64,000 nt of DNA. Origin: Scyliorhinus canicula. Its lineage: Eukaryota. Location: positions 4,700,135-4,764,134 of the forward strand of contig NW_024055500.1 in assembly GCF_902713615.1 (NCBI RefSeq). Reading direction: 5' to 3'. This document shows positions 1 through 54,399 of the stretch, in pieces (within the stretch, counting starts at the first letter, position 1; every line of letters starts with the position of its first letter). Below the pieces are notes generated by a model, which saw only the letters and a list, made by a program, of their open reading frames with translations, had not been told where the DNA came from and ran no database searches. Made by a program: the position numbers and the translations under genes.

Positions 1-159
1 CCATTCCGCGGGATGAATTTGCGATGTCAATAGTTCCCATTGAAGATTTGCCATGTCAACCGTCACATTACATTGCAGCTGCAGCCTCCGGCCACCGGAT
101 GGCGACATTCTCACTGCATTGGTGATGGAGAGAAATCATTGCCTTAAGAATTCTGGGCC

Positions 160-3100
160 AGTACTGACCCTTTATCAGTGCGGCACTCCGTCAGTACTGA
201 CCCTCTGACAGTGCAGCACTCCCTCAGTACTGACCCTCTGACAGTGCGGCACTCCCTCAGTACTGACCCTCTGACAGTGCGGCACTCCCTCAGTACTGAC
301 CCCCTCTGACAGTGCAGCACTCCCTCAGTACTGACCCTCTGACAGTGCGGCACTCCCTCAGTACTGACCCTCTGACAGTGCGGCAGTCCCTCAGTACTGA
401 CCCTCTGACAGTGCGGCCCTCCCTCAGTACTGACCCTCTGACAGTGCGGCTCTCCCTCAGTACTGACCCTCTGACAGTGATGCACTCCCTCAGTACTGAC
501 CCTCTGACAGTGCGGCACTCCCTCAGTACTGACCCTCTGACAGTGCGGCAGTCCCTCAGTACTGACCCTCTGACAGTGCGGCACTCTCTCAGTACTGACC
601 CTCTGACAGTGCGGCACTCCCTCAGTACTGACCCTCTGACAGTGCAGCGCTCCCTCAGTACTGACCCTCTGACAGTGCAGCGCTCCCTCAGTACTGACCC
701 TCTCACAGGGCAGCACTCCCTCAGTAGTGACCCTCTGACAGTGCGGCACTCCCTCAGTACTGACCCACTGAGAGTGCGGCACTCCCTCAGTAGTGATCCT
801 CTGACAGTGCGGCACTCCCTCAGTACTGACCCTCTGACAGTGCGGCACTCCCTCAGTACTGACCTTCTGACGGTGCAGCACTCCCTCAGTACTGACCCTC
901 TGACAGTGCAGCACTCCCTCAGTACTGACCCTCTGACAGTGCGGCACTCTCTCAATACTGACCCTCCCACAGTGCGGCACTCCCTCAGTACTGACCCTCT
1001 GACAGTGCAGCATTCATTCAGTACTGACCCTCCGACAGTGCAGCACTCCCTCAGTACTGACCCTCTGACAGTGCGGCACTCTCTCAATACTGACCCTCCC
1101 ACAGTGCGGCACTCCCTCAGTACTGACACTCTGACAGTGAGGCACTCCCTCAGTACTGACCCTCTGACAGTGCGGCACTCCCTCAGTACTGACCCTCTGA
1201 CAGTGCAGCACTCCCTCAGTACTGACCCACTGACAGTGCGGCGCTCCCTCAGTACTCACCCTCTGACAGTGCAGCACTCCCTCAGTACTGACCATCTGAC
1301 AGTGCGGCGCTCCCTCAGTACTGACCCTCTGACAGTGCAGCATTCACTCAGTACTGACCCTCCGACAGTGCAGCACTCCCTCAGTACTGACTCCCTGACA
1401 GTGCGGCACTCCCTCAGTACTGACCCTCTGACAGTGCAGCACTCCCTCAGTACTGACCCTCTGACAGTGCGGCGCTCCCTCAGTACTGACCCTCTGACAG
1501 TGCAGCACTCCCTCAGTACTGAACCTCTGACAGTGCGGCACTCCCTCAGTACTGACCCTCTGACAGTGCGGCACTCACTCAATACTGACCCTCTGACAGT
1601 GCGGTGCTCCTTCAGTACTGACCCTCTGACAGTGCGGCACTCACTCAATACTGACCCTCTGACAGTGCGGCACTCCCTCAGTACTGACCCTCTGACAGTG
1701 CAGCACTCCCTCAGTACTGACCCTCTGACAGTGCGGCACTCCCTCAGTACTGACCCTCTGACAGTGCGGCACTCCCTCAGTACTGACCCTCTGACAGTGC
1801 GGCACTCCCTCAGTACTGACCCTCTGACAGTGCGGCACTCCCTCAGTACTGACCCTCTGACAGTGCGGCACTCCCTCAGTACTGACCCTCTGACAGTGCG
1901 GCACTCCCTCAGTACAGACCCTCTGACAGTGCGGCACTCCCTCAGTACTGACCCTCTGACAGTGCAGCACTCCCTCAGTACTGACCCTCTGACAGTGCGG
2001 CGCTCCCTCAGTACTGACCCTCTGACAGTGCGGCACTCCCTCAGTACTGACCCTCTGACAGTGCAGCACTCCCTCAGTACTGACCCTCTGACAGTGCGGC
2101 ACTCCCTCAGTACTGACCCTCTGACAGTGCGGCACTCCCTCAGTACTGACCCTCTGACAGTGCAGCACTCCCTCAGTACTGACCCTCTGACAGTGCGGCA
2201 CTCCCTCAGTACTGACCCTCTGACAGTGCGGCACTCCCTCAGTACTGACCCTCTGACAGTGCGGCACTCCCTCAGTACTGACCCTCTGACAGTGCGGCAC
2301 TCCCTCAGTACTGACCCTCTGACAGTGCGGCACTCCCTCAGTACAGACCCTCTGACAGTGCGGCACTCCCTCAGTACTGACCCTCTGACAGTGCAGCACT
2401 CCCTCAGTACTGACCCTCTGACAGTGCGGCGCTCCCTCAGTACTGACCCTCTGACAGTGCGGCACTCCCTCAGTACTGACCCTCTGACAGTGCAGCACTC
2501 CCTCAGTACTGACCCTCTGACAGTGCGGCACTCACTCAATACTGACCCTCTGACAGTGCGGCACTCCCTCAGTACTGACCCTCTGACAGTGCAGCACTCC
2601 CTCAGTACTGACCCTCTGACAGTGCGGCACTCCCTCAGTACTGACCCTCTGACAGTGCGGCACTCCCTCAGTACTGACCCTCTGACAGTGCGGCACTCCC
2701 TCAGTACTGACCCTCTGACAGTGCGGCACTCCCTCAGTACAGACCCTCTGACAGTGCGGCACTCCCTCAGTACTGACCCTCTGACAGTGCAGCACTCCCT
2801 CAGTACTGACCCTCTGACAGTGCGGCGCTCCCTCAGTACTGACCCTCTGACAGTGCGGCACTCCCTCAGTACTGACCCTCTGACAGTGCAGCACTCCCTC
2901 AGTACTGACCCTCTGACAGTGCGGCACTCCCTCAGTACTGACCCTCTGACAGTGCGGCACTCCCTCAGTACTGACCCTCTGACAGTGCGGCACTCCCTCA
3001 GTACTGACCCTCTGACAGTGCGGCACTCCCTCAGTACAGACCCTCTGACAGTGCGGCACTCCCTCAGTACTGACCCTCTGACAGTGCAGCACTCCCTCAG

Positions 3101-3418
3101 TACTGACCCTCTGACAGTGCAGCACTCCCTCAGTACTGACCCTCTGACAGTGCGGCACTCTCTCAGTACTGACCCTCTGACAGTGCAGCACTCCCTCAGT
3201 ACTGACCCTCTGACAGTGCGGCGCTCCCTCAGTACTGACTCTCTGACAGTGCGGCACTCCCTCAGTACTGACCCTCTGACAGTGCAGCACTCCCTCAGTA
3301 CTGACCCTCTGACAGTGCGGCACTCCCTCAGTACTGACCCTCTGACAGTGCGGCACTCCCTCAGTACTGACCCTCTGACAATGCAGCGCTCCCTCAGTAC
3401 TGACCCTCTGAGTGTGCG
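160..3418 (+). repeat. Minisatellite A, 33-bp unit CAGTACTGACCCTCTGACAGTGCGGCACTCCCT, about 99 copies
   Basis: Direct reading; source of the 1107-aa HSLSTDPLTVR ORF and the antisense PHCQRVSTEGV ORFs. Confidence 0.98.
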
Positions 3419-3541
3419 GATCTCCCTTCAGACTCATCGTGGGGACTTTCTGATCCTTCCAGTTGATCTGATGTTTATATTTCTGTCCATCAACAGCTTG
3501 GTGACTTGCAGTAACTATAATATATTTTGCTCCTTTCACAG

Positions 3542-3588
3542 AACAACAAGTTCCGGGCCAAAGTTTACAACAATACAAAAAGCAGCAG
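3542..3588 (+). CDS. RBM39/RBM23: Candidate coding exon a (47 nt, NNKFRAKVYNNTKSS)
   Basis: Acceptor ttttgctcctttcacag|, donor ag|gtaaac, phase 0-2. Size and phase resemble the short second coding exon of RBM39 (DENKL...), but sequence similarity is weak. Confidence 0.6.
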
Positions 3589-12500: not shown

Positions 12501-15500
12501 CAGGTACAGCACGGGGTTAGATACAGAGTAAAGCTCCCTCTACACTGTCCCCATCAAACACTCCCAGGACAGGTACAGCACGGGGTTAGATACAGAGTAA
12601 AGCTCCCTCTACACTGTCCCCATCAAACACTCCCAGGACAGGTACAGCACGGGGTTAGATACAGAGTAAAGCTCCCTCTACACTGTCCCCATCAAACACT
12701 CCCAGGACAGGTACAGCACGGGGTTAGATACAGAGTAAAGCTCCCTCTACACTGTCCCCATCAAACACTCCCAGGACAGGTACAGCACGGGGTTAGATAC
12801 AGAGTAAAGCTCCCTCTACACTGTCCCCATCAAACACTCCCAGGACAGGTACAGCACGGGGTTAGATACAGAGTAAAGCTCCCTCTACACTGTCCCCATC
12901 AAACACTCCCAGGACAGGTACAGCACGGGGTTAGATACAGAGTAAAGCTCCCTCTACACTGTCCCCATCAAACACTCCCAGGACAGGTACAGCACGGGGT
13001 TAGATACAGAGTAAAGCTCCCTCTACACTGTCCCCATCAAACACTCCCAGGACAGGTACAGCACGGGGTTAGATACAGAGTAAAGCTCCCTCTACACTGT
13101 CCCCATCAAACACTCCCAGGACAGGTACAGCACGGGGTTAGATACAGAGTAAAGCTCCCTCTACACTGTCCCCATCAAACCCTCCCAGGGACAGGTACAG
13201 CACGGGGTTAGATACAGAGTAAAGCTCCCTCTACACTGTCCCCATCAAACACTCCCAGGACAGGTACAGCACGGGGTTAGATACAGAGTAAAGCTCCCTC
13301 TACACTGTCCCCATCAAACACTCCCAGGACAGGTACAGCACGGGGTTAGATACAGAGTAAAGCTCCCTCTACACTGTCCCCATCAAACACTCCCAGGACA
13401 GGTACAGCACGGGGTTAGATACAGAGTAAAGCTCCCTCTACACTGTCCCCATCAAACACTCCCAGGACAGGTACAGCACGGGGTTAGATACAGAGTAAAG
13501 CTCCCTCTACACTGTCCCCATCAAACACTCCCAGGACAGGTACAGCACGGGGTTAGATACAGAGTAAAGCTCCCTCTACACTGTCCCCATCAAACACTCC
13601 CAGGACAGGTACAGCACGGGGTTAGATACAGAGTAAAGCTCCCTCTACACTGTCCCCATCAAACACTCCCAGGACAGGTACAGCACGGGGTTAGATACAG
13701 AGTAAAGCTCCCTCTACACTGTCCCCATCAAACACTCCCAGGACAGGTACAGCACGGGGTTAGATACAGAGTAAAGCTCCCTCTACACTGTCCCCATCAA
13801 ACACTCCCAGGACAGGTACAGCACGGGGTTAGATACAGAGTAAAGCTCCCTCTACACTGTCCCCATCAAACACTCCCAGGACAGGTACAGCACGGGGTTA
13901 GATACAGAGTAAAGCTCCCTCTACACTGTCCCCATCAAACACTCCCAGGACAGGTACAGCACGGGGTTAGATACAGAGTAAAGCTCCCTCTACACTGTCC
14001 CCATCAAACACTCCCAGGACAGGTACAGCACGGGGTTAGATACAGAGTAAAGCTCCCTCTACACTGTCCCCATCAAACACTCCCAGGACAGGTACAGCAC
14101 GGGGTTAGATACAGAGTAAAGCTCCCTCTACACTGTCCCCATCAAACACTCCCAGGACAGGTACAGCACGGGGTTAGATACAGAGTAAAGCTCCCTCTAC
14201 ACTGTCCCCATCAAACACTCCCAGGACAGGTACAGCACGGGGTTAGATACAGAGTAAAGCTCCCTCTACACTGTCCCCATCAAACACTCCCAGGACAGGT
14301 ACAGCACGGGGTTAGATACAGAGTAAAGCTCCCTCTACACTGTCCCCATCAAACACTCCCAGGACAGGTACAGCACGGGGTTAGATACAGAGTAAAGCTC
14401 CCTCTACACTGTCCCCATCAAACACTCCCAGGACAGGTACAGCACGGGGTTAGATACAGAGTAAAGCTCCCTCTACACTGTCCCCATCAAACACTCCCAG
14501 GACAGGTACAGCACGGGGTTAGATACAGAGTAAAGCTCCCTCTACACTGTCCCCATCAAACACTCCCAGGACAGGTACAGCACGGGGTTAGATACAGAGT
14601 AAAGCTCCCTCTACACTGTCCCCATCAAACACTCCCAGGACAGGTACAGCACGGGGTTAGATACAGAGTAAAGCTCCCTCTACACTGTCCCCATCAAACA
14701 CTCCCAGGACAGGTACAGCACGGGGTTAGATACAGAGTAAAGCTCCCTCTACACTGTCCCCATCAAACACTCCCAGGACAGGTACAGCACGGGGTTAGAT
14801 ACAGAGTAAAGCTCCCTCTACACTGTCCCCATCAAACACTCCCAGGACAGGTACAGCACGGGGTTAGATACAGAGTAAAGCTCCCTCTACACTGTCCCCA
14901 TCAAACACTCCCAGGACAGGTACAGCACGGGGTTAGATACAGAGTAAAGCTCCCTCTACACTGTCCCCATCAAACACTCCCAGGACAGGTACAGCACGGG
15001 GTTAGATACAGAGTAAAGCTCCCTCTACACTGTCCCCATCAAACACTCCCAGGACAGGTACAGCACGGGGTTAGATACAGAGTAAAGCTCCCTCTACACT
15101 GTCCCCATCAAACACTCCCAGGACAGGTACAGCACGGGGTTAGATAGAGAGATGAGCTCTGTGTAGGCTGCGGGTTGTAGGGGCTGGAGGGGGTTACCGA
15201 GATAGGGAGGGGTGTAGGGACTGGAGGAGGTTACAGAATTAGGGAGGAGGTGTAGGGGCTGGAGGAGGTTACAGAGATAGGGAGGGGTATAGGGACTGGA
15301 GGAGGTTACAGAGATAGGGAGGGGTGTATGGGCTGGAGGAGGTTACAGAGATAGGGAGGGGTGTAGGGACTGGAGGAGGTTACAAGGACAGGGAGGGATG
15401 TGGGGGGCTGGAGGAGGTTAAAGAGATAGCGAGGGTTGGATGGGCTGGAGGAGGTTACAGAGATAGGGAGGGGAGTAGGTGCTGGAGGAGGTTACAGAGA

Positions 15501-18500
15501 TAGGGAGGGGTGTAGGGGCTGGAGGAGGTTACAGAGATAGGGAGGGGTGTAGGGGGCTGGAGGAGGTTACAGAGATAGCGAGGGTTGGATGGGCTGGAGG
15601 AGGTTACAGAGATAGGGAGGGTTGTGGAGCTGGAGGAGGTTATAGTAATATGAAGGCTTATAGGGGGCTGAAGTTGGTTCGAGAGATATGGAGGGTTGTC
15701 GGGGCTGGAGGATGTGACAGAGATAGGGAGGGTCGTAGAGAGCTGGTGGAGGTTACAGAGATAGGGAGGGGTGTAGGGGCTGGAGGAGGTTACAGAGATA
15801 GGGAGGGTTGTCGGGGCTGGAGTATGTGACAGAGATAGGGAGGGTCGTAGAGAGCTGGAGGAGGTTACAGAGATAGGGAGGGGTGTCGGGGCTGGAGGAG
15901 GTTACAGAGATAGGGAGGGTTGTCGGGTCTGGAGGAGGTTACAGAGATAGGGAGGCTTGTAGGGGCTGGAAGAGGTTACAGAGATAGGAAGGGGTGTAGT
16001 GGCTGGAGGAGGTTACAGGGAAAGGGAGGGTTGTAGCGGCTGAGGGAGGTTATAGAGATCGGGAGAATTGTAGATACTGGAGGAGGTTACACATTTAGGG
16101 AGGGCTGTAGATAGTGGAGGATGGTTACAGAGATAGGGAGTTTTGTAGGTACTGGAGGAGGTTACAGAGATAGGGAGGGGTGTAGGTACTGGAGGAGGTT
16201 ACAGAGATAGGGAGGGGTGTAGGTACTGGAGGAGGTTACAGAGATAGGGAGGGGTGTAGGGGGCTGGAAGAGGTTACAGAGATAGGGAGGGTTGTAGCGG
16301 CTGTAGGATGTTTCTGAGATAGTGAGGGTTGCAGTTACTGGAGGAGGTTACAGAGATAGGGAGGGGTGTAGGGGCTGGAGGAGGTTACAGAGATAGGGAG
16401 GGTGTAGGGGCTGGAGGAGGTTACAGAGATAGGGAGGGTTGTAGGGAGCTGGAGGAGGATACAGAGATAAGGAGGGTTGTAGGGAGCTGGAGGAGGTTAC
16501 AGAGATAGGGACGGGTGTAGGGGCTGGAGGAGGTTACAGAGAGAGGGAGGGGGGTATGGGCTAGAGGAGGTTACAGAGATAGGGAGGGGTGTAGGGGCTG
16601 GAGGAGGTTACAGAGATAGGGAGGGTGTAGGGGCTGGAGGAGGTTACAGAGATAGGGAGGGTTGTAGGGAGCTGGAGGAGGATACAGAGATAAGGAGGGT
16701 TGTAGGGAGCTGGAGGAGGTTACAGAGATAGGGACGGGTGTAGGGGCTGGAGGAGGTTACAGAGAGAGGGAGGGGGGTATGGGCTAGAGGAGGTTACAGA
16801 GGTAGGGAGGGTTGTAGGGGCTGGAGGAAATTACAGAGAGGGAGTAGGTTATGGGCTGGAGGAGGTTACAGAGATAGGGAGGGTTGTAGGGAGCTGGAGG
16901 AGGTTACAGAGATAGGGAGGGTTGCAGATACTGGAGGAGGTTACAGAGATAGGGTGGGTTGTAGGGAGCTGGAGGAGGTTACAGAGATAGGGAGGGTTGT
17001 AGGTACTGGAGGAGTTTACAGAGATAGGGAGGGTTGTCGGGGCTGGAGGAGGTTACAGAGAAAGGGAGGGGTGTAGGGGCTGGAGGAGGTTACAGAGATA
17101 GGGAGGAGGTGTAGGGGCTGGAGGAGGTTACAGAGATAGGGAGGGTTGTAGGGAGCTGGAGGCGGTTACAGAGATAGGGAGGGTTGTAGAGAGCTGGAGG
17201 TGGTTACAGAGATAGGGAGGCTTGTAGGTACTGGAGGAGGTTACAGAGATAGGGAGGGTTATAAGGAGCTGGAGGAGGTTACAGAGATAGGGAGGGTTGT
17301 AGGTACTGGAGGAGGTTACTGAGATAGGGAGGGCTGTAGATACTGGAGGAGGTTACTGAGATAGGGAGGGGTGTAGGGGCTGGAGGATGTCACAGTGATA
17401 GGGAGGGTTGTAGGTGCTGGAGGAGGGTACAGAGAGAGGGAGAGGTGTACGGGCTGGGGGAGGTTACAGAGATAGGGAGGGTTGTAGGGGCTGGAGGAGG
17501 TTACAGAGATAGGGAGGGTTGTAGATACTGGAGGAGGTTACAGAGATAGGGAGGGTTGCAGATACTTGAGGAGGTTACAGAGATAGGGAGGGTTGTTGGG
17601 GCTGGAGGAGGTTACAGAGATAGGGAGGGTTGTAGATACTGGAGGAGGTTACAGAGATAGGGAGGGTTGTATGGGACGAGATTACAGAGATAGAGATGGG
17701 TGTAGGGACTGGAGGAGGTTACAGAGATAGGGATGGTTGTAGGGGCAGGAGGATGTTACAGAGATAGGGAGGGGTGTAGGGGCTGGAGGAGGTTACAGAG
17801 ACAGGGAGGGTTGTATGGGAGGAGATTGCAGAGATAGGGAGGGTTGTAGGGGACTGGAGGAGGTTACAGGGATAGGGAGGGTTGTAGGGGACTGGAGGAG
17901 GTTACATAGATAGGGAGGGGTGTAGGGGCTGGTGGAGGTTATAGAGATAGTGAGGGGTGTAGGTGCTGGAGGTTACAGAGATAGGGAGGGTTGTATGGGA
18001 GGAGATTACAGAGATAGGGAGGGTGTAGGGGCTGGAGGAGGTTACTGAGGTAGTGAGGTTTATAGATACGAGGAGGTTACAGAGATAGGGAGAGTTGTAC
18101 GGGAGGAGGTTACAGAGATAGGGAGGGTGTAGGGGCTGGAGGAGGTTACAGAGATAGGGAGGGTGTAGGGGTTGGAGGAGGTTACAGAGACTGGGGTGGT
18201 TGTATGGGAGGAGATTACAGAGATAGGGAGGGTGTAGGGGCTGGAGGAGGTTACTGAGATAGTGAGGTTTATAGATACTGGAGGAGGTTGCAGAGATAGG
18301 GAGGGTTGTACGGGAGGAGGTTACTGAGATAGGGAGGGTTGTACGGGAGGAGGTTACAGAGATAGGGAGGGTTTTACAGGAGGAGGTTACAGAGATAGGG
18401 AGGGTTGTATGGGAGGGGATTACAGAGATAGGGAGGGTTGTTGGGGGCTGGAGGAGGTTACAGAGATAGGGAGGGTTTTAGGGGCTGGAGGAGGTTACAG

Positions 18501-21500
18501 AGATAGGGAGGGCTGTTGGTGGCTGGTGGAGGTTATAGAGATAGTGAGGGGTGTAGGTGCTGGAGGAGGTTACAGAGATAGGGAGGGTTGTATGGGAGGA
18601 GATTACAGAGATAGGGAGGGTGTAGGGGCTGGAGGAGGTTACTGAGATAGTGAGGTTTATAGATACGAGGAGGTTACAGAGATAGGGAGAGTTGTACGGG
18701 AGGAGGTTACAGAGATAGGGAGGGTGTAGGGGCTGGAGGAGGTTACAGAGATAGGGAGGGTGTAGGGGCTGGAGGAGGTTACAGAGACAGGGGTGGTTGT
18801 ATGGGAGGAGATTACAGAGATAGGGAGGGTGTAGGGGCTGGAGGAGGTTACTGAGATAGTGAGGTTTATAGATACTGGAGGAGGTTGCAGAGATAGGGAG
18901 GGTTGTACGGGAGGAGGTTACTGAGATAGGGAGGGTTGTACGGGAGGAGGTTACAGAGATAGGGATGGTTTTACAGGAGGAGGTTACAGAGATAGGGAGG
19001 GTTGTATGGGAGGGGATTACAGAGATAGGGAGGGTTGTTGGGGGCTGGAGGAGGTTACAGAGATAGGGAGGGTTGTAGGGGCTGGAGGAGGTTACAGAAT
19101 AGGGAGGGGTGTAGGGGCTGGTTGAGGTTACAGAGATAGGGAGGGGTGTAGGGGGACTGGAGGAGGTTACAGAAATAGGGAGGGTTGTAGAAAGCTGGAG
19201 GAGGTTACAGAGATAGAGAGGGTTGTACGGGAGGAGGTTACAGAGATAGGGAGGGTTGGTGGGTTGGAGGTGGGAGTCTACGTTGGCAATATGTACCTTT
19301 GAAATGTCGATGTGAGATTGACATTTGCACAATCTCTTTCCAGCAGCAGATGTGGTGGGGCAGAACTCCAAACCCTCTCTCATTTGAGTCTTCCGGCGCC
19401 TTCTAGCGAGAGTCGTGAAGCAACAGACAGTCGTAGCCAAAGTCACGAAGATAGCAGCAGGTACTCCATCCCTTCACTCAGTCCCCCCTCTCTCTCTCAG
19501 GGAGATATCTGTACACTGACTGGTGTCTCTCAGTCCCCCTCTCTCTCTCAGGGAGATATCTGTACACTGACTGGTGTCTCTCAGTCCCCCTCTCTCTCAG
19601 GGAGATATCTGTACACTGACTGGTGTCTCTCAGTCCCCCTCTCTCAGGGAGATATCTGTACACTGACTGGTGTCTCTCAGTTCCCCCTCTCTCTCAGGGA
19701 GATATCTGTTCACAGACTGGTGTCTCTCAGTCCCCTCTCTCTCTCAGGGAGATATCTGTACACTGACTGGTGTCTCTCAGTCCCCTCTCTCTCTCAGGGA
19801 GATATCTGTACACTGACTGGTGTCTCTCAGTTCCCCCTCTCTCAGGGAGCTATCTGTACACTGACTGGGGTCACTCAGTCCCCTCTCCCTCTCAGGGAGA
19901 TATCTGTACACTGACTGGTGTCTCTCAGTCCCCCTCTCTCTCAGGGAGATATCTGTACGCTGACTGGTGTCTCTCAGTCCCCTCTCTCTCTCTCAGGGAG
20001 ATATCTGTACACTGACCTGTCTCTCAGTCCCCTCTCTCTCAGGGAGATATATGTACACTGACTGGTGTCTCTCAGTCCCCTCTGTCTCAGGGAGATATCT
20101 GTACACTGACGTGTGTCTCTCAGTCCCCCCTCTCTCTCCCAGGGAGATATCTGTACACTGACTGGTGTCTCTCAGTCCCCTCTGGGAGATATCTGTACAC
20201 TGACTGGTGTCTCTCAGTCCTCGCTCTCTCAGGGAGATATCTGTACACTGACTGGCGTCTCTCAGTCCCCTCTCTCTCAGGGAGATATCTGTACACTGAC
20301 TTCTGTCTCTCAATCCCCTCTCTCTCAGGGAGATATATGTACACTAACTGGTGTCTCTCAGTCCCCTCTCTCTCTCAGGGAGATATCTGTACACTGACTG
20401 GTGTCTCTCAGTCCCCTCTCTCTCTCAGGGAGATATCTGTACACTGACTTGTGTCTCTCAGTCCTCTCTCAAGGAGATATCTGTACACTGACTGGTGTCT
20501 CTCAGTCCCCTCTCTCTCTCAGGGAGATATCTGTACACTGACTTGTGTCTCTCAGTCCTCTCTCAAGGAGATATCTGTACACTGACTGGTGTCTCTCAAT
20601 CCCCTCTCTCTCTCAGGGAGATATCTGTACACTGACTGGTGTCTCTCAGTCCCCTCTCTCTCTCTCAGGGAGATATCTGTACACTGACTGGTATCTCGCA
20701 GTCCCCTCTCTCTCAGGGAGCTATCTGTACAGTGACTGGTGTCTCTCTGTCCCCTCTCTCTCAGGGAGATATCTGTACACTGACTGGTGTCTCTCAGTCA
20801 CCTCTCTCTCCCTCAGGGAGATATCTGTACACTGACTGGTGTCTCTCAGTCCTCTCTCTCAGGGAGATATCTGTGCACTGACTGGTATCTCTCAGTCCCC
20901 TCTCTCTCAGGGAGATATCTGTACACTGACTGGTGTCTCTCAGTCCCCTCTCTCTCTCAGGGAGATATCTGTACACTGACTGGTGTCTCTCAGTCCCCTC
21001 TCTCTCTCTCAGGGAGATATCTGTACACTGACTGGTATCTCGCAGTCCCCTCTCTCTCAGGGAGCTATCTGTACAGTGACTGGTGTCTCTCTGTCCCCTC
21101 TCTCTCAGGGAGATATCTGTACACTGACTGGTGTCTCTCAGTCACCTCTCTCTCCCTCAGGGAGATATCTGTACACTGACTGGTGTCTCTCAGTCCCCTC
21201 TCTCTCAGGGAGATAGCTGTACACTGACTGGTATCTCTCAGTCCCTCCTCTCTCTCAGGGAGATATCTGTACACTGACTGGTATCTCTCAGTCCCCTCTC
21301 TCTCAGGGAGCTATCTGTACACTGACTGGTGTCTCTCAGTCCCTCTCTCTCTCAGGGAGATATCTGTACACTGACTGGTGTCTCTCAGTCCCCTCTCTCT
21401 CAGGGAGCTATCTGTACACTGACTGGTGTCTCTCAGTCCCCTCACTCAGGGAGATATCTGCACTGACTGGTGTCTCTCAGTCCCCTCTCTCTCTCAGGGA

Positions 21501-24500
21501 GATATCTGCACTGACTGGTGTCTCTCAGTCCCCCCTCTCTCTCAGGGAGATATCTGTACACTGACTGGTGTCTCTCAGTCCCTCTCTCTCTCAGGGAGAT
21601 ATCTGTACACTGACTGGTGTCTCTCAGTCCCCTCTCTCTCTCAGGGAAATATCTGTACACTGACTGGTGTCTCTCAGTCCCCCCTCTCTCTCAGGGAGCT
21701 ATCTGTACACTGACTGGTGTCTCTCAGTCCCCTCTCTCTCAGGGAGATATCTGTACACTGACTGGTGTCTCTCAGTCTCCTCTCTCTCTGGGAGATATCT
21801 GTACACTGACTGGTGTCTCTCAGTCCCCTCTCTCTCAGGGAGATATCTGTACACTGACTGGTATCTCTCAGTCCCCCCTCTCTCTCAGGGAGGTATCTGT
21901 ACACTGACTGGTGTCTCTCAGTCCCCCCTCTCTCTCTCAGGGAGCTATCTGTACAGTGACTGGTGTCTCTCAGTCCTCTCTGTCTACAGGCGTTACCTGG
22001 CCACGGACCGGTGTCTCGCAATACATATATGTCGCAAGTTCTGTACATTCACATCTTCCAACATTTCCTTAATGTTCTCTCTCTCCTACAGCACCAGTCA
22101 CGAGAGGAAGTACGCCAGAGCCCATCACCGACGCAGGAGAAGTCACGAGAGACGGAGACGGCACTCACACGGGAAATCCAGGCACAGCCGGAGAGGGCAC
22201 CACAGCCACAGCAGGGGGCATCGGTCCTCTCACCGTGGCAGCCAAAGGTGCGGGCCTGATCTCGCGCAGCGATTGAACTCCGACTGTCCTCAGCCTCTGC
22301 CACTCTCACAAGGGTCCGGCAGTGCCACCCTGACCTGGGGCGTTCCCTCACCCCTGCCACTGGACTGCCCTCTTCCCTCCGCTTTTGCCAGACCCGTTCA
22401 CCCAATCACCGATTCCCACCGCGGAACTTTGTTCAACAAGCAATTGCGCTCTGAGTGACCTAGCCCAGCAAAGCTCAATGTGCCTCGTACATCTATTGAG
22501 GTCCAATTGAGCAAGTGGTCCACTCGTTAACATTCTTTGTACAGCCCCCACACACAGATGATTAAGCCCGGACTGGCCACTGCTTGTGCAATTAAACTCC
22601 GACTGACCTTCACTCCCCACAGTTCCATTGTCAATCAGTCAATTAAACTCCGACTGACCTCTGCTTGTTCAGTTCACCAAAGCCAAACAAACCTCTGATT
22701 AACCTGTGTCAGCATTGTTCCCAAACGCAATTGCACTCTGAATGACCTCTAGGCATCAAGACAATTTAAATCCGACTGGCCTCCCTCTGCACAGCTCTCT
22801 CAGTCAAACAATTGATCTCTGACTGACCTCTACTCTGGGTTGGTGGGCTACGTTTCTTGGTCTAGTTCCATGGATGAGACAGATGAAAAACTCTGATGAG
22901 AATGGGTGGGATGGAAATGGAGGTCTAGAGAAGGAACTGCCACCACCTCAGGATCTCGAAAGGTAGCCTATTCATTTGTGGAGTGCAAGAAGTGAGGTCT
23001 GTCCTTTTAATGCAACCCCGATTGTGTTTCAGGTATCGGCGATCACCTAGTAGGAGCCGGAGTCCATTGTACAGGGACAGGAGCTTCAGCAGGTGAGGGC
23101 CCAAAGGCATCAGAAGACTCACTCTCTGCCCCCTCCTCGTTCTACCTTATTAAAGCTGTGAGTTAAATTATTAAAGCTGTGGTCACTTTAAGCGCAGCAA
23201 GCACAGTATAAGGCTCACCTCAACTTGCCACGCTTGAACTCTGACTGACCTCACTGTGCACGGTTCCTTCACGGAACAATTGAACTCTGACTGACCTCAC
23301 TGTGCACGGTTCCTTCACTGAACAATTGAACTCTGACTGACCTTCACTGAACAATTGAACTCTCACTGACCGCACTGTGCATGGTTCCTTCACTGAACAA
23401 CTGAACTCTGACTTATCTTCACTAAACAATTGAACTCTGACTGACCGCACTGTGCAGGTCTCCTTCACTGAACAATAGAATTCTGACAGACCTCACTGTG
23501 CATGTTCCTTCAGTGAACAATTGAACTCTGACTGACCTCACTGTGCACGGTTCCTTCACTGAACAATCGAACTCTGACTGACCTCACTGAACAATTAAAC
23601 TCTGACTGACCTCACTGTGCACAGTTCCTTCACTGAACAATTGAACTCTGACTGACCACACTGTGCACGGTTCTTTCACTGAACAATTGAACTCTAACTG
23701 ACCTCACTGTGCACAGTTCCTTCACTGAACAATTGAACTCTGACTGACCACACTGTGCACGGTTCTTTCACTGAACAATTGAACTCTAACTGACCTCACT
23801 GTGCACAGTTCCTTCACTGAACAATTGAACTCTGACTGTCCTCACTGTGCACGCTTCATTCACTGAACAATTAAACTCTGACTGACCGTCTTGGTGGGGA
23901 GGTTGTGGCGGGAGGGGTGTGGAGGGGGCGGGGTCACTCAAGACAACAGAGGCAAAGCTTATGTGGGAGTGGAGGGCGGGTAGGCTGGGAAATTGTAGTT
24001 GAGAGCACCACCGGATCTGATTGGATGGTGGAGTGGACTAGAAGGGCTGGAAGGGCCTGAATGGCCTCCATCTTCTCTGACAAACCGCACCCCAAAACTG
24101 ATTGGGTGGCAAGTGGACTCTGATTGGTAGAGGCGTCGCCACGGAGAATGCACCAGCTCGAATGGGAAATGGCAGTTAACTGCCAAGCGTTCATTGAGGT
24201 TTCCAACCAGGCAGCTTGACTCTGATGGGGCAAGGCTTTGCCCTGAGGAATGGACCAGAGAACGGCTGTCATTTATGTTGTCTGCAAAATTGTGATGGTC
24301 CTGATGAGTGCGCGGCGGGAAGTTTTGAGAAAACACTACTCGTTCCAGAGACGTTCGATTGATCTCTGCTTGACGGAGCGCTGTGCAACTTGCTTCTTCA
24401 AGCAATTGCACTCTCACTGTCCCCAAATCACAGTTCGTTCACTGAACAAAGTTTTGCATTGATACAGCAACATAGTGTTCAAAGATACATCACAGGAGAG

Positions 24501-27500
24501 ATTCAGGAATTGCAACACCAAGCGACATAAAGAAGTGTTTGGATCAAACATAGAACATAGAACAGTACAGCACAGAACAGGCCCTTCGGCCCTCGATGTT
24601 GTGCCGAGCAATGATCACCCTACTCAAACCCACATATCCACCCTATACCCGTAACCCAATAACCCCCCCCCCTTAACCTTACTTTTTAGGACACTATGGG
24701 CAATTTATCGCGGCCAATCTACCCAACCCGCACATCTTTGGACTGTGGGAGGAAACCGGAGCACCCGGAGGAAACCCACGCACACACGGGGAGGACGTGC
24801 AGACTCCGCACAGACAGTGACCCAAGCCGGGAATCGAACCTGGGACCCTGGAGCTGTGAAGCATTTATGCTAACCACCATGCTACCGTGCTGCCCCTTTA
24901 AAATAACAAATAACAAGCAAAACCATTTGTCAAAGCGGTTCATTGTCTCAAAGGAGCAGGGAGCAAAAATGGTGGATTGAGGGAGAGAGCACTGGAAAGG
25001 CGGAGCCAAAAGCATGGACAACCAATGGTGGAGCGATAGAAATTCGGCCATGAGGGGGCGCTCAAGGGTCCGGATTGGTAGGGAACTCAGAGCATTGGAG
25101 GGACTGCATGGGTTCAAACAGATATGGAGGGATGTATGGATTGGAGTGGGGTTGTAGAGGGCTGGAGTAGGTAGGAAGGTTGTGGGGCTGGAGGAGGTTA
25201 CAGAGATAGGGAGAGTTGTAGGGGCTGGAGGAGGTTCCAGAGATAGGGAGGGTTGCAGGGGCTGGAGGAAGTTCCAGAGATAGGGAGGGTTGCAGGGGAT
25301 GGAAGTTACAGAGATAGGGAGGGGTGTAGGGGCTGGAGGAGGTTACAGAGATAGGGAGTGTTGGAGGGACTGGAGGAGGTTACAAAGATAGGGAGGGTTG
25401 TGGGGGCTGGAGGAGGGTACAGAGATAGGGAGGGTTGTAGGGTCTGGAGGAGGTTCCAGAGATAGGGAGCATTGTAGGGGCTGGAAGTTCCCACGATAGG
25501 GAGGGTAGTAGGGACTGGATGAGGTTATAGAGACAGGAAGGATTGTCGGCAGCTGGAGGAGATTACAGAAATGGGGAGGGTTGTGGGGGCTGGAGGAGTT
25601 ACAGAGATAGGGAGGGTTGTAGGTGGCTGGAGGAGTTACAGAGAAAGGGAGGATTGTAGGGGGCTGGAGGAGGCTACAAAGATAGTGAGGGTTGTAGGGG
25701 GCTGGAGGGGGTTATAGAGATAGGGGGATGTAAGGGGCTGGAGGAGGTTAGAGACAGGGAGGGTTGTAGGGACTGGAGTAATTTACAGAGATAGAGGATT
25801 GTAGGGTTCTGGAGGAGGTTATAGAGGTGGGGGGGGTTGTAGAGGCTGGAGGAGGTGATACAGATAGGGACGGGTGTAGGGACTGGAAAATGTTACGGAG
25901 ATAGCGAGGGTTATAGGGGCTGGAGGAGGTTACAGAGATAGGGAGGATTGTAGGGGCTGGAGGAGGTTACAGAGATAGGGAGGGGTGTAGGGACTGGAAA
26001 ATGTTACGGAGATAGCGAGGGTTGTAGGGGCTGGAGGAGGTTACAGAGATAGGGAGGGTTGTAGAGGATGGAGGAGGTTACAGAGGCAGGGAAGAAGGTC
26101 GTAGTGGGTGGAGGAGGTTACAGAGATAGGAAGGGGTGTAGTGGGCTGGACGAGGTTACAGAGATAGGGAGGAATGTAGGGGATGGAGGAGGTTACAAAT
26201 ATAGGGTGGGTTGTAGGGGGCCGGAGGGGGTTACTGAGATAGGGAGGGTTGTAGGGGCTGGAGGAGGTTATAGAGATAGGGAGGGATGTAGGGGCTGGAG
26301 GAGGTTATAGAGATAGGGAGGGTTGTAGGGGCTGGAGGAGGTTACAGAGATAGGGAGGGTTGTAGGGGGCTGGAGGGGGTTTCAGAGATAGGGAGGGTTG
26401 TAGGGGCTGGAGGGGGTTACAGAGATAGGGAGGGTTGTAGGGGCTGGAGGAGGTTATAGAGATAGGGAGGGATGTTGGGGCTGGAGGAGGTTACAGAGAT
26501 AGGGAGAGTTGTAGGGGCTGGAGGAGGATACAGAGATAGGGAGGGTTGTAGTGGGCTGGAGGAGGTTACAGAGATAGGGAGGGTTGTAGGGGCTGGAGGG
26601 GGTTACAGAGATTGGGAGGGTTGTAGGGCTGGAGGAGGTTACAGAGATAGGGAGGGTTGGCGGGACTGGAGGAGGTTACAGAGATAGGGAGGGTTGTAGG
26701 GGCTGGAGGAGGTTACACAGATAGCGAGGGTTGTAGGGGGCTGGAGGAGGTTACAGTGATAGGTAAGGATGTAGGGGATGGAGGAGGTTACAGAGATAGG
26801 GTGGGTTGTAGGGGGCTGGAGGGGGTTACAGAGATAGGGAGGGTTGTCCGGGCTGGAGGAGGTTATAGAGATAGGGAGGGTTGTAGGGACTGGAGGTTAC
26901 AGAGATAGGAAGGGGTGTAGGGGGCTGGAGGAGGTTACAGAGATAGGGAGGGGTGTAGGGGCTGGAGGAGGTTACAGAGATAGGGAGGGTTGGCGGGACT
27001 GGAGGAGGTTACAGAGATAGGGAGGGTTGGCGGGACTGGAGGAGGTCACAGAGACAGGGTGTCTAACGATGACCATTAAACCGTTGTCGAACCACGTGAA
27101 ACCAATTTGATTCGCCAATGTTATTTCGGGGAGGATATCTGCCGCCCTGACCTGATCTGGCCACCTGGTGACTTAGAAAAACCCTCTGAAATCTCCTCTG
27201 AAGCCATGGGGAATAAAACCTGGCCCATGAGTAGACACGCACATCCTCTGACAGAATGGGAAGGATGTGCCAGTGTAGGTGGGTGGATTATGGTGTAAGA
27301 TAGTGCCTCATCAATCTCACTGCCATCTAATATCCCTGTCAAGAGATCAGACTTCGAAAAGGACCCCGGAGGAGAGAGATGCTTGCACAGTGTTATGTCT
27401 GCAATTTTCCGGACACATTCGACCCAGGGACCTTGCCGATTTCTTCAGACCAGCTGGGAAGGTATGGATAGTAACCATTGATCTGTATCTCACCCTGTGC

Positions 27501-30500
27501 TGTACCTGTCCTGCGAGTGTTTGATGGGGATAGTGTAGTGGGAGCTTTACTCTGTATCTAACCCCGTGCTGTACCTGTCCTGGGAGTGTTTGATGGGGAC
27601 AGTGTAGAGGGAGCTTTACTCTGTATCTAACCCGTGCTGTACCTTTCCTGGGAGTGTTTGATGGGGACAGTGTACAGGGAGCTTTACTCTGTATCTAACC
27701 CCGTGCTGTACCTGTCCTGGGAGTGTTTGATGGGGACAGTGTAGAGGGAGCTTTACTCTGTATCTAACCCCGTGCTGTACCTTTCCTGCGAGTGTTTGAT
27801 GGGGACAGTGCAGAGGGAGCTTTACTCTGTAACTAACCCCGTGCTGTACCTTTCCTGGGAGTGTTTGATGTGGACAGTGTCGAGGGAGCTTCACTCTGTA
27901 TCTCACCCCGTGCTGTACCTGTCCTGAGAGTGTTTGATGGGGACAGTGTAGAGGGAGCTTTACTCTGTATCTAACCCTGTGCTGTACCTGTCCTGGGAGT
28001 GTCAGTGTAGAGGGAGATTTACTCTGTATCTAACCCGTGCTGCATCAGGCCTGGGAGAGTTTGATGGGGACAGTGTGGAGGGAGCTTTACTCTGTATCTA
28101 ACCCCATGCTGTACCTGTCTTGGGAGAGTTTGATGGGGACATGCAGAGGGAGCTTTACTCTGTATCTAACCCTGTGTTGTACCTGTCCTGGGAGTGTTTG
28201 ATGGGGACAGTGTAGAGGGAGCTTTACTCTGTATCTAACCCCGTGCTGTAACTGTCCAGGGAGTGTTTGATGGGGACAGCGGAGAGGGAGCTTTACTCTG
28301 TATCGAACCCCGTGCTACACCTGTCCAGGGAGTGTTTGATGGGGACAGTGTAGAGGGAGCTTTACTCTGTATCTAACCCCGTGCTGTACCTTCCCTGGGA
28401 GTGTTTGATGGGGACAGTGTCGAGGGAGCTTTACTCTGTATCTAACCACGTGCTGTACCAGTCCTGGGAGTGTTTGATGGGGACAGTGTAGAGGGAGCTT
28501 TACTCTGTATCTAACCCCGTGCTGTACCTGTCCTGGGAGTGTTTCATGGGGACAGTGTGGAGGGAGCTTTACTCTGTATCTAACCCCGTGCTGTACCTGT
28601 CCTGGGAGTGTTTTATGGAGACAGTGTAGAGGGAGCTTTACTCTGTACCTAATGTCTCTTCTACCTTGATAGGTTCGAGATGTGAAGATCATATCAGACA
28701 GGAGCTCGCGCAGATCAAAAGGCATTGCTTACGTTGAGTTTTATGAGATGGATTCTGTCGCATTGGCCATCAATCTCTCAGGATCGAGACTGTTCGGAAT
28801 TCCTATCATTGTTCAAGCATCTCAGGTACATTAACATCAGGTATTTTGGAATCATCACCACCAACTGTCAGTACCTAGGGCGCGCTGCACTGTCAGAGGG
28901 TCAGTACTGAGGGAGCGCTTCACTGTCAGAGTGTCAGTACTGAGGGAGTGCTGCACTGTCAGAGGGTCAGTAATGAGGGAGTGCTTCACTGTCAGAGGGT
29001 CAGTACTGAGGGAGTGCCGCACTGTCAGAGGGTCAGTACTGAGCGAGTGCCGCACTGTCAGAGGGTCAGTACTGAGGGAGCGCTGCACTGTCAGAGGGTC
29101 AGTACTGAGGGAGTGCCGCACTGTCAGAGGGTCAGCATTGAGGGAGAGCCGCACTGTCAGGTGGTCAGTACTGATGGAGCGCCGCTCTGTCAGAGGGTCA
29201 GTACTGAGGGAGTGCCGCTCTGTCAGAGGGTCAGTACAGAGGGAGTGCCGCACTGTCAGAGGGTCAGTCCTGAGGGAGTGCCGCACTGTCAGATGGTCAG
29301 TACTGAGGGAGTGCTGCACTGTCAGAGAGTCAGTACTGAGGGAGTGCCGCACTGTCAGAGGGTCAGTACTGAGGGAGTGCCGCACTGTCAGAGGGTTAGT
29401 ACTGAGGGAGTGCCGCACTGTCAGAGGGTCAGTACTGAGGGAGTGCCGCACTGTCAGAGGGTCAGTACTGAGGGAGCGCCGCACTGTCAGAGGGTCAGTA
29501 CTGAGGGTGTGCCTCACTGTCAGAGGGTCAGTACCGAGGGAGTGCCGCACTGTCAGAGGGTCAGTACTGAGGGAGCACCGCACCATCAGAGGGTCAGTAC
29601 TGAGGGAGCGCCGCACTGTCAGAGGGTCAGTACTGAGGGAGTGCTGCACTGTCAGAGGGTCAGTACTGAGGGAGTGCTGCACTATCAGAGGGTCAGTACT
29701 GAGGGATCACTGCACTGAGGGTCAGTACTGAGGGAGCTCCGCACTGTCAGAGGGTCAGTATTGAGGGAGCGCCACACTGTCAGAGGGTCAGTACTGAGGG
29801 AGTGCTGCACTATCAGAGGGTCAGTACTGAGGGAGTGCCACACCATCAGAATGTCAGGACTGAGGGAGCACCGGACGGTCAGAGGGTCAGTAGTGAGGGA
29901 GTGCCGCACTGTCAGAGNNNNNNNNNNNNNNNNNNNNNNNNNNNNNNNNNNNNNNNNNNNNNNNNNNNNNNNNNNNNNNNNNNNNNNNNNNNNNNNNNNN
30001 NNNNNNNNNNNNNNNNNNNNNNNNNNNNNNNNNNNNNNNNNNNNNNNNNNNNNNNNNNNNNNNNNNNNNNNNNNNNNNNNNNNNNNNNNNNNNNNNNNNN
30101 NNNNNNNNNNNNNNNNNNNNNNNNNNNNNNNNNNNNNNNNNNNNNNNNNNNNNNNNNNNNNNNNNNNNNNNNNNNNNNNNNNNNNNNNNNNNNNNNNNNN
30201 NNNNNNNNNNNNNNNNNNNNNNNNNNNNNNNNNNNNNNNNNNNNNNNNNNNNNNNNNNNNNNNNNNNNNNNNNNNNNNNNNNNNNNNNNNNNNNNNNNNN
30301 NNNNNNNNNNNNNNNNNNNNNNNNNNNNNNNNNNNNNNNNNNNNNNNNNNNNNNNNNNNNNNNNNNNNNNNNNNNNNNNNNNNNNNNNNNNNNNNNNNNN
30401 NNNNNNNNNNNNNNNNNAAACCCAGCTCAACCCAACCCCACTCAACCCAACCCAACTCAACTCAACTGAACCCAACTCAACCCAACCCAACTCATACCAA

Positions 30501-49050: not shown

Positions 49051-49073
49051 AAGACACATCAACCTCGGAATGA
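49051..49073 (+). CDS. Possible terminal coding exon ((E/K)DTSTSE*)
   Basis: Strong acceptor attttgtttgcctccttcag| in unique sequence; in phase 1 it reaches TGA after 7 residues. No homology support and no nearby AATAAA. Confidence 0.35.
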
Positions 49074-49284
49074 ATCTATCCAATGGTGAATCTACGGAGA
49101 AATCCTAGCCGAACGGGGCGAATGACTCATTTGAGGATTTCACCAGAGATGCAAATACCTCCCACTTCATAGAAATATGATGTGTACATAACAAGCTTGG
49201 TTACCTGGCCAAACTATTTAGAAAGTTGGATTAGGACAGGAATTAATTCAGGACCGTCTGAAGTCAAACCCTCCCTGATCTCCT

Positions 49285-53279: not shown

Positions 53280-53878
53280 TGGGTCTGTACTGGTTGGGAG
53301 TTTAGAAAGATGAGGGGGGGGGGTCTTATTGAAACTTACAGGATACTGCGTGGCCTGGATAGAGTGGACGTGGATGTGTCCACTTGTAGGGAAAACTAGA
53401 AGCAGAGGACACCATCTCAGACTGAAGGGACGATCCTTTAAAACAGAGATGAGGAGGAATTTCTTCAGCCAGAGGGTGGGTGAATCTGTGGAACTCTTTG
53501 CCGCAGAAGGCTGTGGAGGCCAAATCTCTGAGATAATAAGAATAATCGCTTATTGTCACAAGTAGGCTTCAAATGAAGTTACTGTGAATAGCCCCTAGTC
53601 GCCACATTCAGGCGCCTGTTCGGGGAGGCCGGTACGGGAATTGAACCCGCGCTGCTGGCCTTGTTCTGCATTACAAGCCAGCCGTTTAGCCCACCCTGCT
53701 AAACCAGCCCAGAGTGTCTCTAATACAGAGATAGATAGGCTTTTGATCAATAAGGGGATCAGGGGGTTATGGGGAGAAGGCAGGAGAATGGGGATGAGAG
53801 AAATATCAGCCATGATTGAATGGTGGAGCAGACTCGATGGGCCGAGTGGCCTATTTCTGCTCCTATGTCTTATGGTCT
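53280..53878 (+). mobile_element. CR1-clade LINE 3' end, split by a SINE insertion
   Basis: LIETYRILRGLDRVD..TRSRGHHLRLKGRSFKTEMRRNFFSQRV; closely similar to 55148-55473. Confidence 0.88.
53535..53710 (-). mobile_element. Short tRNA-derived SINE nested in the LINE
   Basis: Same family as 46262-46452; the LINE sequence resumes after it (agagtgtctctaatacagag). Confidence 0.83.
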
Positions 53879-54399
53879 TCGATATGCACACCTAATCCAT
53901 TATTATAGCAGGTAGATACAATCCAATATATATACCAATGTCTTACATTGATTACAATGGAGACTGCAAATTAACCGGATCGGCAGATGAGGCGAACAGT
54001 CTGGGTTAGTCTGTGTGCAACCACTGTAGTCATGTTTGCGAAGAGTCCTGTCTTGAAATGTGGGGAGCCAAGGGTGTCATTGAACCATTGTAAAATGCTT
54101 GGGCTGATGGAGTTGAGTTTGGATTGAGGGGGATTCCCTGTGGAGTTAATTAGGTTCCAGATGATGTCGTCACTGGGTGGAGCTGAGGAGTCAGTGAGTT
54201 AGGAAAACGCAGTTGAGCCCTAAGCTAAATGAAGCTGTGACTAGAGGTCGAGCAGATTGCTGTCACCAGAGTTCAGTTGAAAGAGATTGACGGTATTTAA
54301 GGCGGTTCAGACTTGTCTGAGTACAAGGTGGAGAGCTGAAACAAAAGGAGAAACAGCTTTCTGAAAACAGTTTCTGCGTTTCTCTGAAGCATGGACCTT

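What the first reader, a model, noticed from the sequence alone, without database searches (positions are those of the whole stretch)
160..29917. Mirror-image satellite arrangement: A(+) [exon a] B(+) ... B(-) [exon f] A(-)
Seen: two unrelated families lie in nested inverted order, each pair separated only by a 170-220 bp unique island that holds a coding exon. Inference: if array A(+) is intronic (start exon upstream), the pre-mRNA can fold into a nested stem of about 1 kb A/A plus about 1.2 kb B/B duplex. Exons a and f would sit opposite each other in an internal loop and exons b-e (451 nt) in the terminal loop. Established: intronic inverted repeats drive back-splicing, exon skipping and ADAR editing (known for Alu pairs). 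Satellites acting this way in a splicing-factor gene would be new to me. The order could also be chance, given how common these families are.
Basis: partly seen in the sequence, partly recalled or inferred. Interest (0 to 1): 0.7.

Follow-up and report, generated by a model that had tools for sequence, protein, structure and literature searches.

The report
Inverted satellite arrays in shark RBM39-like introns
A catshark splicing-factor gene has introns made almost wholly of common tandem repeats, and two repeat families do lie in mirror-image order around six exons, but this fits chance and nothing yet shows that it changes splicing.

Summary
A 33-bp array (A, 159-3427) and a 69-bp array (B, 3591-15151) lie on one strand. 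Their reverse complements lie at 27482-28652 (B) and 28867-29917 (A). Islands of 163 and 214 bp between them each hold a true coding exon of the small-spotted catshark RBM39-like gene.

The inverted arrays are 93-95% complementary over 1.05 and 1.17 kb and co-fold into full duplexes.

The neat nested stem is only one of several equally strong pairings. A third B array and a 6-kb inverted C array would cross it, and the two C arrays inside the mirror are direct, not inverted. Arrays make up 77% of the gene span, and both families are very abundant and shared with other species.

Shuffling the gene's arrays gives the two-family pattern in 5-8% of trials. The only informative RNA evidence is a spliced contig showing ordinary linear splicing of exon e to f. 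This scan already noted inverted 69-bp blocks around exons of another catshark gene (unchecked).

Verdict: most likely an incidental layout. Whether it forms double-stranded RNA, circular RNA or edited sites is untested.

The parts
159..3427 (+). Array A1: 33-bp unit, 99 copies, in the intron upstream of exon a
   Evidence: 94% matches; 92% of the intron part inside the window
3542..3588 (+). Exon a (47 nt; NNKFRAKVYNNTKSS), coding
   Evidence: AG/GT borders, identical to P0001 residues 22-36; homologous segment in the white shark protein P0003
3591..15151 (+). Array B1: 69-bp unit, 167.6 copies, starts 3 nt after exon a ends
   Evidence: 98% matches; (165 CAGGTA motifs)
15172..19258 (+). Array C1: 37-bp G-rich unit, same intron as B1
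19344..19460 (+). Exon b (117 nt) with tandem CAG|CAG acceptor
19486..21976 (+). Array D: 48-bp unit filling intron b-c
22092..22247 (+). Exon c (156 nt), Arg/His/Ser-rich region
23033..23092 (+). Exon d (60 nt)
25174..27059 (+). Array C2: 37-bp unit, same orientation as C1 (direct, not inverted)
27344..27461 (+). Exon e (118 nt), start of RRM1
   Evidence: RNA contig
27482..28652 (-). Array B2: 69-bp unit inverted, fills 97% of intron e-f
   Evidence: (94.8% complementary to B1)
28673..28825 (+). Exon f (153 nt), RRM1 core with the RNP1 motif
   Evidence: spliced to exon e
28867..29917 (-). Array A2: 33-bp unit inverted, ends at an assembly gap
   Evidence: (93.0% complementary to A1)
29918..30417 (.). 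Assembly gap (500 N) directly behind A2; not examined
35021..35158 (+). Exon g (138 nt)
36280..36345 (+). Exon h
36753..42815 (-). Array C3: 37-bp unit inverted, in intron h-i; competing partner for C1 and C2
43437..43642 (+). Exon i
44403..44493 (+). Exon j
49052..49075 (+). Last coding exon (…EDTSTSE, stop)
49283..51196 (-). Array B3: 69-bp unit inverted, about 210 nt behind the stop codon; best partner of B1 by identity
   Evidence: (98.3% over 1914 nt)

Best explanation
This is the small-spotted catshark RBM39-like gene, a paralogue with an Arg/His/Ser-rich region, RRM1, RRM2 and a linker, but no C-terminal UHM domain. Its introns have been filled by independent local expansions of a few very abundant minisatellite families.

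A and B each landed twice in opposite orientation, so the order A+ [exon a] B+ ... B- [exon f] A- arose. I read that order as incidental rather than a selected device. The gene is spliced linearly. The arrays could pair in the pre-mRNA, but as one of several competing duplexes, and any circular RNA, exon skipping or editing would be a by-product.

Shown: the arrays, their orientation and complementarity, the exon model, linear e-to-f splicing, and the abundance of the families. Inferred: neutral origin and lack of selected function.
For: Gene model: all exons are identical to P0001, named 'RNA-binding protein 39-like isoform X2 [Scyliorhinus canicula]'. Pfam finds RRM_1 twice and RBM39linker. 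Solved RBM39 and RBM23 RRM1 and RRM2 structures are among the closest matches, E 1e-32 to 1e-38.

Array load: arrays occupy 77% of window 1-49075. Six of 11 introns are at least 86% array.

Abundance: array depth in RNA runs is hundreds to thousands against 0 on the exons. In run X11 the summed word depth reaches about 4x10^5 on arrays against 10.6 on the exons. Three other organism labels hold 70-76% of the sampled exact 31-mers of an A/B stretch.

Orientation looks random: A +,-; B +,-,-; C +,+,-, which is 5 of 7 same-family pairs inverted.

Shuffles give the two-family mirror pattern in 5-8% of trials.

The islands between the arrays are unrelated to each other, so this is not an inverted duplication.

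An RNA contig shows GT..AG removal of the 1211-nt e-f intron and a record length that fits exons b to g in linear order.

Notes of this scan describe many other array-filled catshark introns, including the 69-bp family and one other inverted pair (unchecked leads).
Against: The order is in fact palindromic for three families (A B C ... C B A). Shuffling gives that in only 0.6-0.9% of trials.

A1 ends 114 nt before exon a, and A2 starts 41 nt after exon f. B2 starts 20 nt after exon e. Such closeness favours back-splicing in Alu systems.

Duplex formation is strongly favourable, with a gain of -346 to -364 kcal/mol per roughly 280-nt segment.

No library suited to circular RNA was examined, so absence of an effect is not shown.
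Confidence: 0.72

Rival explanations
1. By-product activity. The layout arose by chance, but the inverted arrays do pair in the pre-mRNA. They then give measurable circular RNA (exons b-e, 451 nt; or a-f, 651 nt), loop-out skipping or ADAR hyper-editing, as inverted Alu pairs do.
For: Complementarity is 93-95% over more than 1 kb and co-folding gives a full duplex. Both arrays of each pair are intronic in one transcription unit. B2 emerges only 8.1 kb after the exon b acceptor, so intron a-b may still be present (inference). Inverted Alu pairs within 0.5-5 kb of exons are enriched around skippable exons (PMC13019027), and their roles are reviewed in PMC11263572.
Against: No back-splice or skipping read was seen; the only transcript evidence is linear. 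For A1:A2 to pair, the first intron must survive 25 kb of further transcription (inference). Rival duplexes B1:B3 and C1/C2:C3 are as strong or stronger and cross the nest. About 10 kb of B1 would be left unpaired.
Confidence: 0.18
2. Selected regulatory device. The nested inverted arrays are kept by selection to tune output of this splicing-factor gene, for example by non-productive circularisation or by frame-shifting loss of exons b-e.
For: The three-family palindromic order is rare under shuffling. Exons b-e total 451 nt, which is not a multiple of 3, so skipping them would shift the frame.
Against: The C pair inside the mirror is direct. The arrays differ in age: 98% internal identity for B1 against 90% for B2. 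The orthologues' gene spans differ widely, 36 kb and 92 kb, which suggests fluid introns. The families are everywhere in this genome. No RNA evidence supports it.
Confidence: 0.05
3. Assembly artefact. The inverted arrays result from a mis-joined or inverted contig.
For: A2 ends in an assembly gap. Long, 98%-identical arrays are hard to assemble.
Against: Exons a-k are collinear on one strand and match the predicted protein. B2 is anchored to unique sequence and true splice sites at both ends, and the e-f intron length of 1211 nt matches the RNA contig's skip. A1 is anchored at both ends and A2 at its left end. The whole mirror lies within one gap-free stretch, 1-29917.
Confidence: 0.03
4. Remnant of an inverted segmental duplication of an A-B block.
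For: Mirror order of A and B, and by order also of C.
Against: The islands between the arrays share no similarity (best E 0.13-0.76) and hold different exons of a collinear gene. C2 is not inverted. B2 is no closer to B1 (94.8%) than expected for family members, since B3 matches B1 at 98.3%.
Confidence: 0.02

Closest known systems
Inverted Alu pairs in flanking introns (circular RNA formation, loop-out exon skipping, ADAR editing); PMC11263572, PMC13019027
   Same: Reverse-complementary copies of an abundant repeat family lie in different introns of one gene, close to exon borders, and can form an RNA stem that encloses exons.
   Different: Here each arm is a 1-11 kb tandem array of 33- or 69-nt units, not a 300-nt SINE monomer. 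Two families are nested, and pairing can occur in many registers. No circular RNA, skipping or editing has been observed.
Mouse Sry circular transcript flanked by very long inverted repeats (from my own knowledge, not checked here)
   Same: Kilobase-scale inverted repeats flank the circularised exon.
   Different: The Sry arms are a unique palindromic duplication, not members of genome-wide satellite families. Circularisation is shown there and not here.
Satellite-filled gigantic introns of Drosophila Y-linked genes kl-3 and kl-5 (PMC6508621, also 10.1101/493254)
   Same: Introns of a protein-coding gene consist mostly of satellite arrays that must be transcribed through.
   Different: Those introns are megabase-sized, made of simple satellites, in testis-specific genes. 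Inverted pairing is not the issue there. Here the introns are 1-16 kb and hold minisatellites.
Other array-filled catshark introns noted in this scan (s1-258577, s1-336038, s1-243457, s1-286356, s1-240314)
   Same: Same genome and same habit: single minisatellite families fill whole introns. The 69-bp family is seen in other genes, once as an inverted pair around exons.
   Different: Those are AI notes, mostly unchecked, on other DNA. None describes a two-family nest.
Vertebrate RBM39 (CAPER-alpha) and RBM23
   Same: Arg-rich N-terminal region, RRM1, RRM2 and RBM39 linker.
   Different: The protein ends after the linker, without the UHM (third RRM). Its N-terminal region is Arg/His/Ser-rich. 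Similar truncated proteins are predicted in three other sharks.

Membership tests
Intronic inverted-repeat pair that drives back-splicing or exon skipping (inverted-Alu type) | Two copies of one repeat family in opposite orientation | tested here: met
   A 93.0% over 1051 nt, B 94.8% over 1171 nt, as reverse complements
Intronic inverted-repeat pair that drives back-splicing or exon skipping (inverted-Alu type) | Both copies lie in introns of one transcription unit and flank exons | tested here: met
   the start exon is not in the window, exon a is residues 22-36, and all arrays lie between mapped exons
Intronic inverted-repeat pair that drives back-splicing or exon skipping (inverted-Alu type) | Cross-intron pairing out-competes other pairings | tested here: inconclusive
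   the duplexes are strongly favoured over self-folds, but B1:B3 and C1:C3 are equally or more favoured and cross the nest
Intronic inverted-repeat pair that drives back-splicing or exon skipping (inverted-Alu type) | Back-splice junctions or skipped isoforms are observed | tested here: inconclusive
   only the linear e-f junction was seen. The three raw-read runs are oligo-dT libraries with no reads on the exons. Junction partners b and a lie outside the 6-kb limit of the tool.
Intronic inverted-repeat pair that drives back-splicing or exon skipping (inverted-Alu type) | Clustered A-to-G changes in the repeat arms | tested here: inconclusive
   listed differences sit where the local copy departs from the family consensus, and the contigs show a similar A>G excess. 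Reads come from arrays all over the genome.
RBM39/RBM23 splicing-factor family | Two canonical RRMs plus the RBM39 linker | tested here: met
   RRM_1 twice, E 8e-33; RBM39linker E 5e-10; RBM39 and RBM23 RRM1 and RRM2 structures
RBM39/RBM23 splicing-factor family | C-terminal UHM (third RRM) | tested here: not met
   the protein ends 'ITEDTSTSE' right after the linker. Only the first 46 of 81 linker profile positions are matched.
Array-filled introns of genome-wide minisatellite families | Introns dominated by tandem arrays | tested here: met
   77% of the gene span; six introns at least 86% array
Array-filled introns of genome-wide minisatellite families | Units belong to families abundant elsewhere in the genome and in relatives | tested here: met
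   depth and loose ends from other loci; three other organism labels hold 70-76% of the words
Inverted segmental duplication (palindrome) | Unique sequence between and beside the arms is also mirrored | tested here: not met
   no significant similarity among the islands; C1 and C2 are direct

The most novel reading that the evidence does not exclude
Kilobase-scale inverted minisatellite arrays act in catshark pre-mRNAs as Alu pairs do in primates. In this RBM39-like gene, B+:B- and A+:A- pairing would loop out exons b-e or a-f and yield circular RNAs or frame-shifted transcripts. That would lower output of a splicing factor and create long dsRNA for ADAR. With a second inverted 69-bp pair noted around exons of another catshark gene, it could be a general, satellite-based route to circular RNA in sharks.
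Probability: 0.1. Interest if true: 0.65.

Novelty: new member of a known kind. Interest (0 to 1): 0.3.

Why it matters
If the arrays paired and changed splicing, tandem satellites would join SINEs as drivers of circular RNA and exon skipping, in a lineage without Alu and in a splicing-factor gene. As it stands, the locus is mainly a clear example of how far catshark introns can be taken over by minisatellites: 77% of the gene span, with arrays starting within 3-40 nt of real splice sites, while an ordinary linearly spliced transcript (exon e joined to f) is still made. It is a convenient natural test case, because the predicted junctions are exact and few.

Tried and rejected
1. Orthologue comparison. 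Look-ups of the S. torazame and white shark proteins returned only gene ranges (92 kb, 36 kb) and no DNA. P0001 itself is not on record. Conservation of the layout could therefore not be tested.

2. Editing test. Reads on the arrays come from all genomic copies, and the listed differences sit where the local copy departs from the family consensus. The test is unusable.

3. Expression in X14-X16. Depth on exons e and f is zero, but these are oligo-dT single-end libraries, possibly 3'-tag libraries (my inference). This says little about expression.

4. Back-splice search. The partners (19344, 3542) lie beyond the 6-kb limit of the single read-laying run, so it was not possible.

5. Similarity between families A, B, C, D, E, G, I, and dispersed copies of A or B outside the arrays in the window: none found.

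6. Inverted duplication: rejected.

7. Rfam: no family at gathering score. One tRNA-like hit outside the finding.

8. Literature. No paper holds stretches of the A or B unit. No paper was found on satellites driving back-splicing, and none on catshark satellites of this kind.

9. The 'SGPKF' match of exon a to RBM39 in another frame was dropped. The annotated frame reads NNKFRAKVYNNTKSS.
Full report
**What is there.** Tandem Repeats Finder shows that 73% of the window is tandem array.
- The finding covers A1 (33-mer, 159-3427), B1 (69-mer, 3591-15151), C1 (37-mer, 15172-19258), D (48-mer, 19486-21976), E (46-mer, 23234-23887), C2 (25174-27059), B2 (27482-28652) and A2 (28867-29917).
- The consensus units of B2 and A2 are exact reverse complements of those of B1 and A1.
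- BLASTN of the oriented arrays gives 93.0% complementarity for A2 against A1 over all 1051 nt, and 94.8% for B2 against B1 over all 1171 nt, in many registers.
- Units of the different families share no detectable similarity.

**The gene.** The exon-like stretches match one protein.
- A search seeded on exon g found 'RNA-binding protein 39-like isoform X2 [Scyliorhinus canicula]' (P0001, 410 aa).
- TBLASTN maps it to the + strand with identical residues within each exon. The exons are a 3542-3588, b 19344-19460, c 22092-22247, d 23033-23092, e 27344-27461, f 28673-28825, g 35021-35158, h 36280-36345, i 43437-43642, j 44403-44493 and a last coding exon at 49052-49075.
- Residues 1-21 of P0001 are not encoded anywhere in the window.
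- Exon a is a real coding exon. It is in the predicted protein, and the white shark protein P0003 has a homologous segment.
- Pfam finds two RRM_1 domains and the RBM39 linker. Solved RBM39 and RBM23 RRM1 and RRM2 structures are among the closest matches.
- The protein stops after the linker, so it lacks the UHM domain. Similar short proteins are predicted in S. torazame, white shark and a sawshark.

**Can the stem form?** Co-folding 280-300-nt samples gives complete intermolecular duplexes.
- The gains over self-folding are -364 kcal/mol for A1:A2 and -346 for B1:B2.
- The controls gain far less: -30 for A1 with B2, and -7 for two direct A1 segments.
- So the nested stem is physically possible.

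**Why I do not read it as a device.**
- It is not the only possible duplex. A third B array (B3, 49283-51196) lies about 210 nt behind the stop codon with no AATAAA in between. It is 98.3% complementary to B1 over 1.9 kb.
- A 6-kb inverted C array (C3, 36753-42815, intron h-i) is about 85% complementary to C1 and C2. It gains -486 kcal/mol per 296 nt, because the C strands barely self-fold. The C pairings cross the A/B nest.
- The order of families is actually A B C ... C B A, but C1 and C2 are direct repeats. Both a mirror-duplication origin and a three-layer stem therefore fail.
- Orientations overall (A +,-; B +,-,-; C +,+,-) look random.
- Shuffling the order and orientation of the gene's 12 arrays gives an adjacent XY...YX pattern with both pairs inverted in 5.2% of trials, and 7.9% with all window arrays.
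- The three-family palindromic order alone occurs in 0.6-0.9% of trials. That is notable, but not compelling for a pattern picked out after reading more than a thousand windows of this genome.
- The islands share no similarity.

**How common the families are.**
- In three oligo-dT RNA runs, depth on B2 and A2 reaches hundreds to thousands while the exons have none.
- In run X11, summed word depth on the arrays reaches about 4x10^5 against 10.6 on the exons.
- Loose ends show a single A unit embedded in a different, abundant context. Some reads join an A unit directly to a B unit (29475>27703), which means other loci.
- Three other organism labels hold 70-76% of the sampled exact 31-mers of window 2900-4300, against 80% in the source species. 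Both families are therefore widespread across species.
- Notes of this scan describe many catshark introns filled by one minisatellite. They include the 69-bp family in a SLAM-family gene, and an unchecked note of inverted 69-bp blocks in the two introns around exons of another gene. The scan has thus seen the same kind of thing before on other DNA.
- In this gene, arrays make up 77% of the span, and six of 11 introns are at least 86% array.

**RNA evidence.**
- One 659-nt contig of run X11 covers exon e and exon f joined by a GT..AG skip of 1211 nt.
- The 336 nt of the contig upstream of exon e fit exons d, c and b (333 nt) plus 3 nt. The 49 nt downstream of exon f would fit the start of exon g. 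These outer parts were not aligned to the window; the assignment rests on length.
- The contig's upstream end falls at the CAG|CAG tandem acceptor of exon b. This is where two acceptor isoforms would diverge. P0001 (isoform X2) has one Ser fewer than the proximal-acceptor reading.
- This is ordinary linear splicing. No back-splice, skipping or usable editing signal was obtained, and the libraries at hand were not suited to circular RNA. The functional claim is therefore untested rather than refuted.

**Kinetics (inference from general knowledge).** A1 could pair with A2 only if the first intron stays unspliced while 25 kb more is transcribed. B1:B2 is more plausible, because intron a-b cannot be removed before position 19344 and B2 appears 8 kb later.

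**Assembly.**
- The whole mirror lies in one gap-free stretch (1-29917).
- The exons are collinear on one strand.
- B2 and A1 are anchored to unique sequence at both ends, and the e-f intron length agrees with the RNA contig.
- An inversion artefact is therefore unlikely.
- A2 ends in a gap, so its length is a minimum, and the length of the 98%-identical B1 array may be imprecise.

**Verdict.** The most likely reading is an incidental arrangement of abundant intron-filling minisatellites (0.72). Next comes by-product pairing with measurable circular RNA or editing (0.18). A selected device (0.05), mis-assembly (0.03) and inverted duplication (0.02) are unlikely.

Noticed in passing
window 159-29917: The order of families is palindromic for three families, not two: A B C ... 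C B A. This occurs in 0.6-0.9% of shuffles. However, the two C arrays (15172-19258, 25174-27059) are in the same orientation.
   Followed up: yes
window 3588-15151: The B array starts 3 nt after the end of exon a. In this orientation each 69-nt unit carries CAG|GTACAG, giving 165 donor-like CAGGTA motifs right behind the real donor CAG|GTAAAC.
   Followed up: partly
window 19341-19349: Tandem CAG|CAG acceptor at exon b. The predicted isoform X2 has one Ser fewer than the proximal-acceptor reading, and the RNA contig of run X11 ends within 3 nt of this site.
   Followed up: partly
window 3542-49075 (protein P0001): This RBM39-like paralogue ends after the RRM2-RRM3 linker and lacks the UHM domain. 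Its N-terminal region is Arg/His/Ser-rich. Similar short proteins are predicted in S. torazame, white shark and a sawshark, so it may be a shark-wide truncated RBM39 paralogue.
   Followed up: partly
window 27482-28652: Reads of three oligo-dT RNA runs on the 69-bp family are about 10:1 strand-biased, so this satellite is present in polyadenylated RNA mainly in one orientation. The 33-bp family shows no consistent bias.
   Followed up: no
window 29067-29098 and 29463-29494: Hundreds of reads carry one 33-bp unit flanked by unrelated sequence. The same two flanks recur at both places and in all three runs, so the A unit is also part of an abundant dispersed, transcribed element.
   Followed up: no
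window 29475 joined to 27703: A few reads in each of three runs join an A unit directly to a B unit. A and B therefore abut without an exon at some other locus.
   Followed up: no
window 35337-35715: A run of 379 N lies just behind exon g, inside CT-rich low-complexity sequence.
   Followed up: no
window 19486-21976: The 48-bp array D fills 95% of intron b-c and carries 44 pyrimidine-tract-plus-AG motifs in the sense strand. This agrees with the separate first-reader note on acceptor look-alikes.
   Followed up: partly
window 53623-53710 and 54365-55195: A tRNA-Ile-like element on the minus strand is probably a SINE head. Similar translated motifs recur at about 46314, 48462 and 53592. A LINE reverse-transcriptase fragment lies downstream of the gene.
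   Followed up: no
window 57418-64000 and 30419-34348: Two further large arrays: an AT-rich 43-mer (150 copies, 95% matches) that runs off the window end, and a 10/15-mer AACCC-rich array of 3.9 kb directly behind the assembly gap.
   Followed up: no
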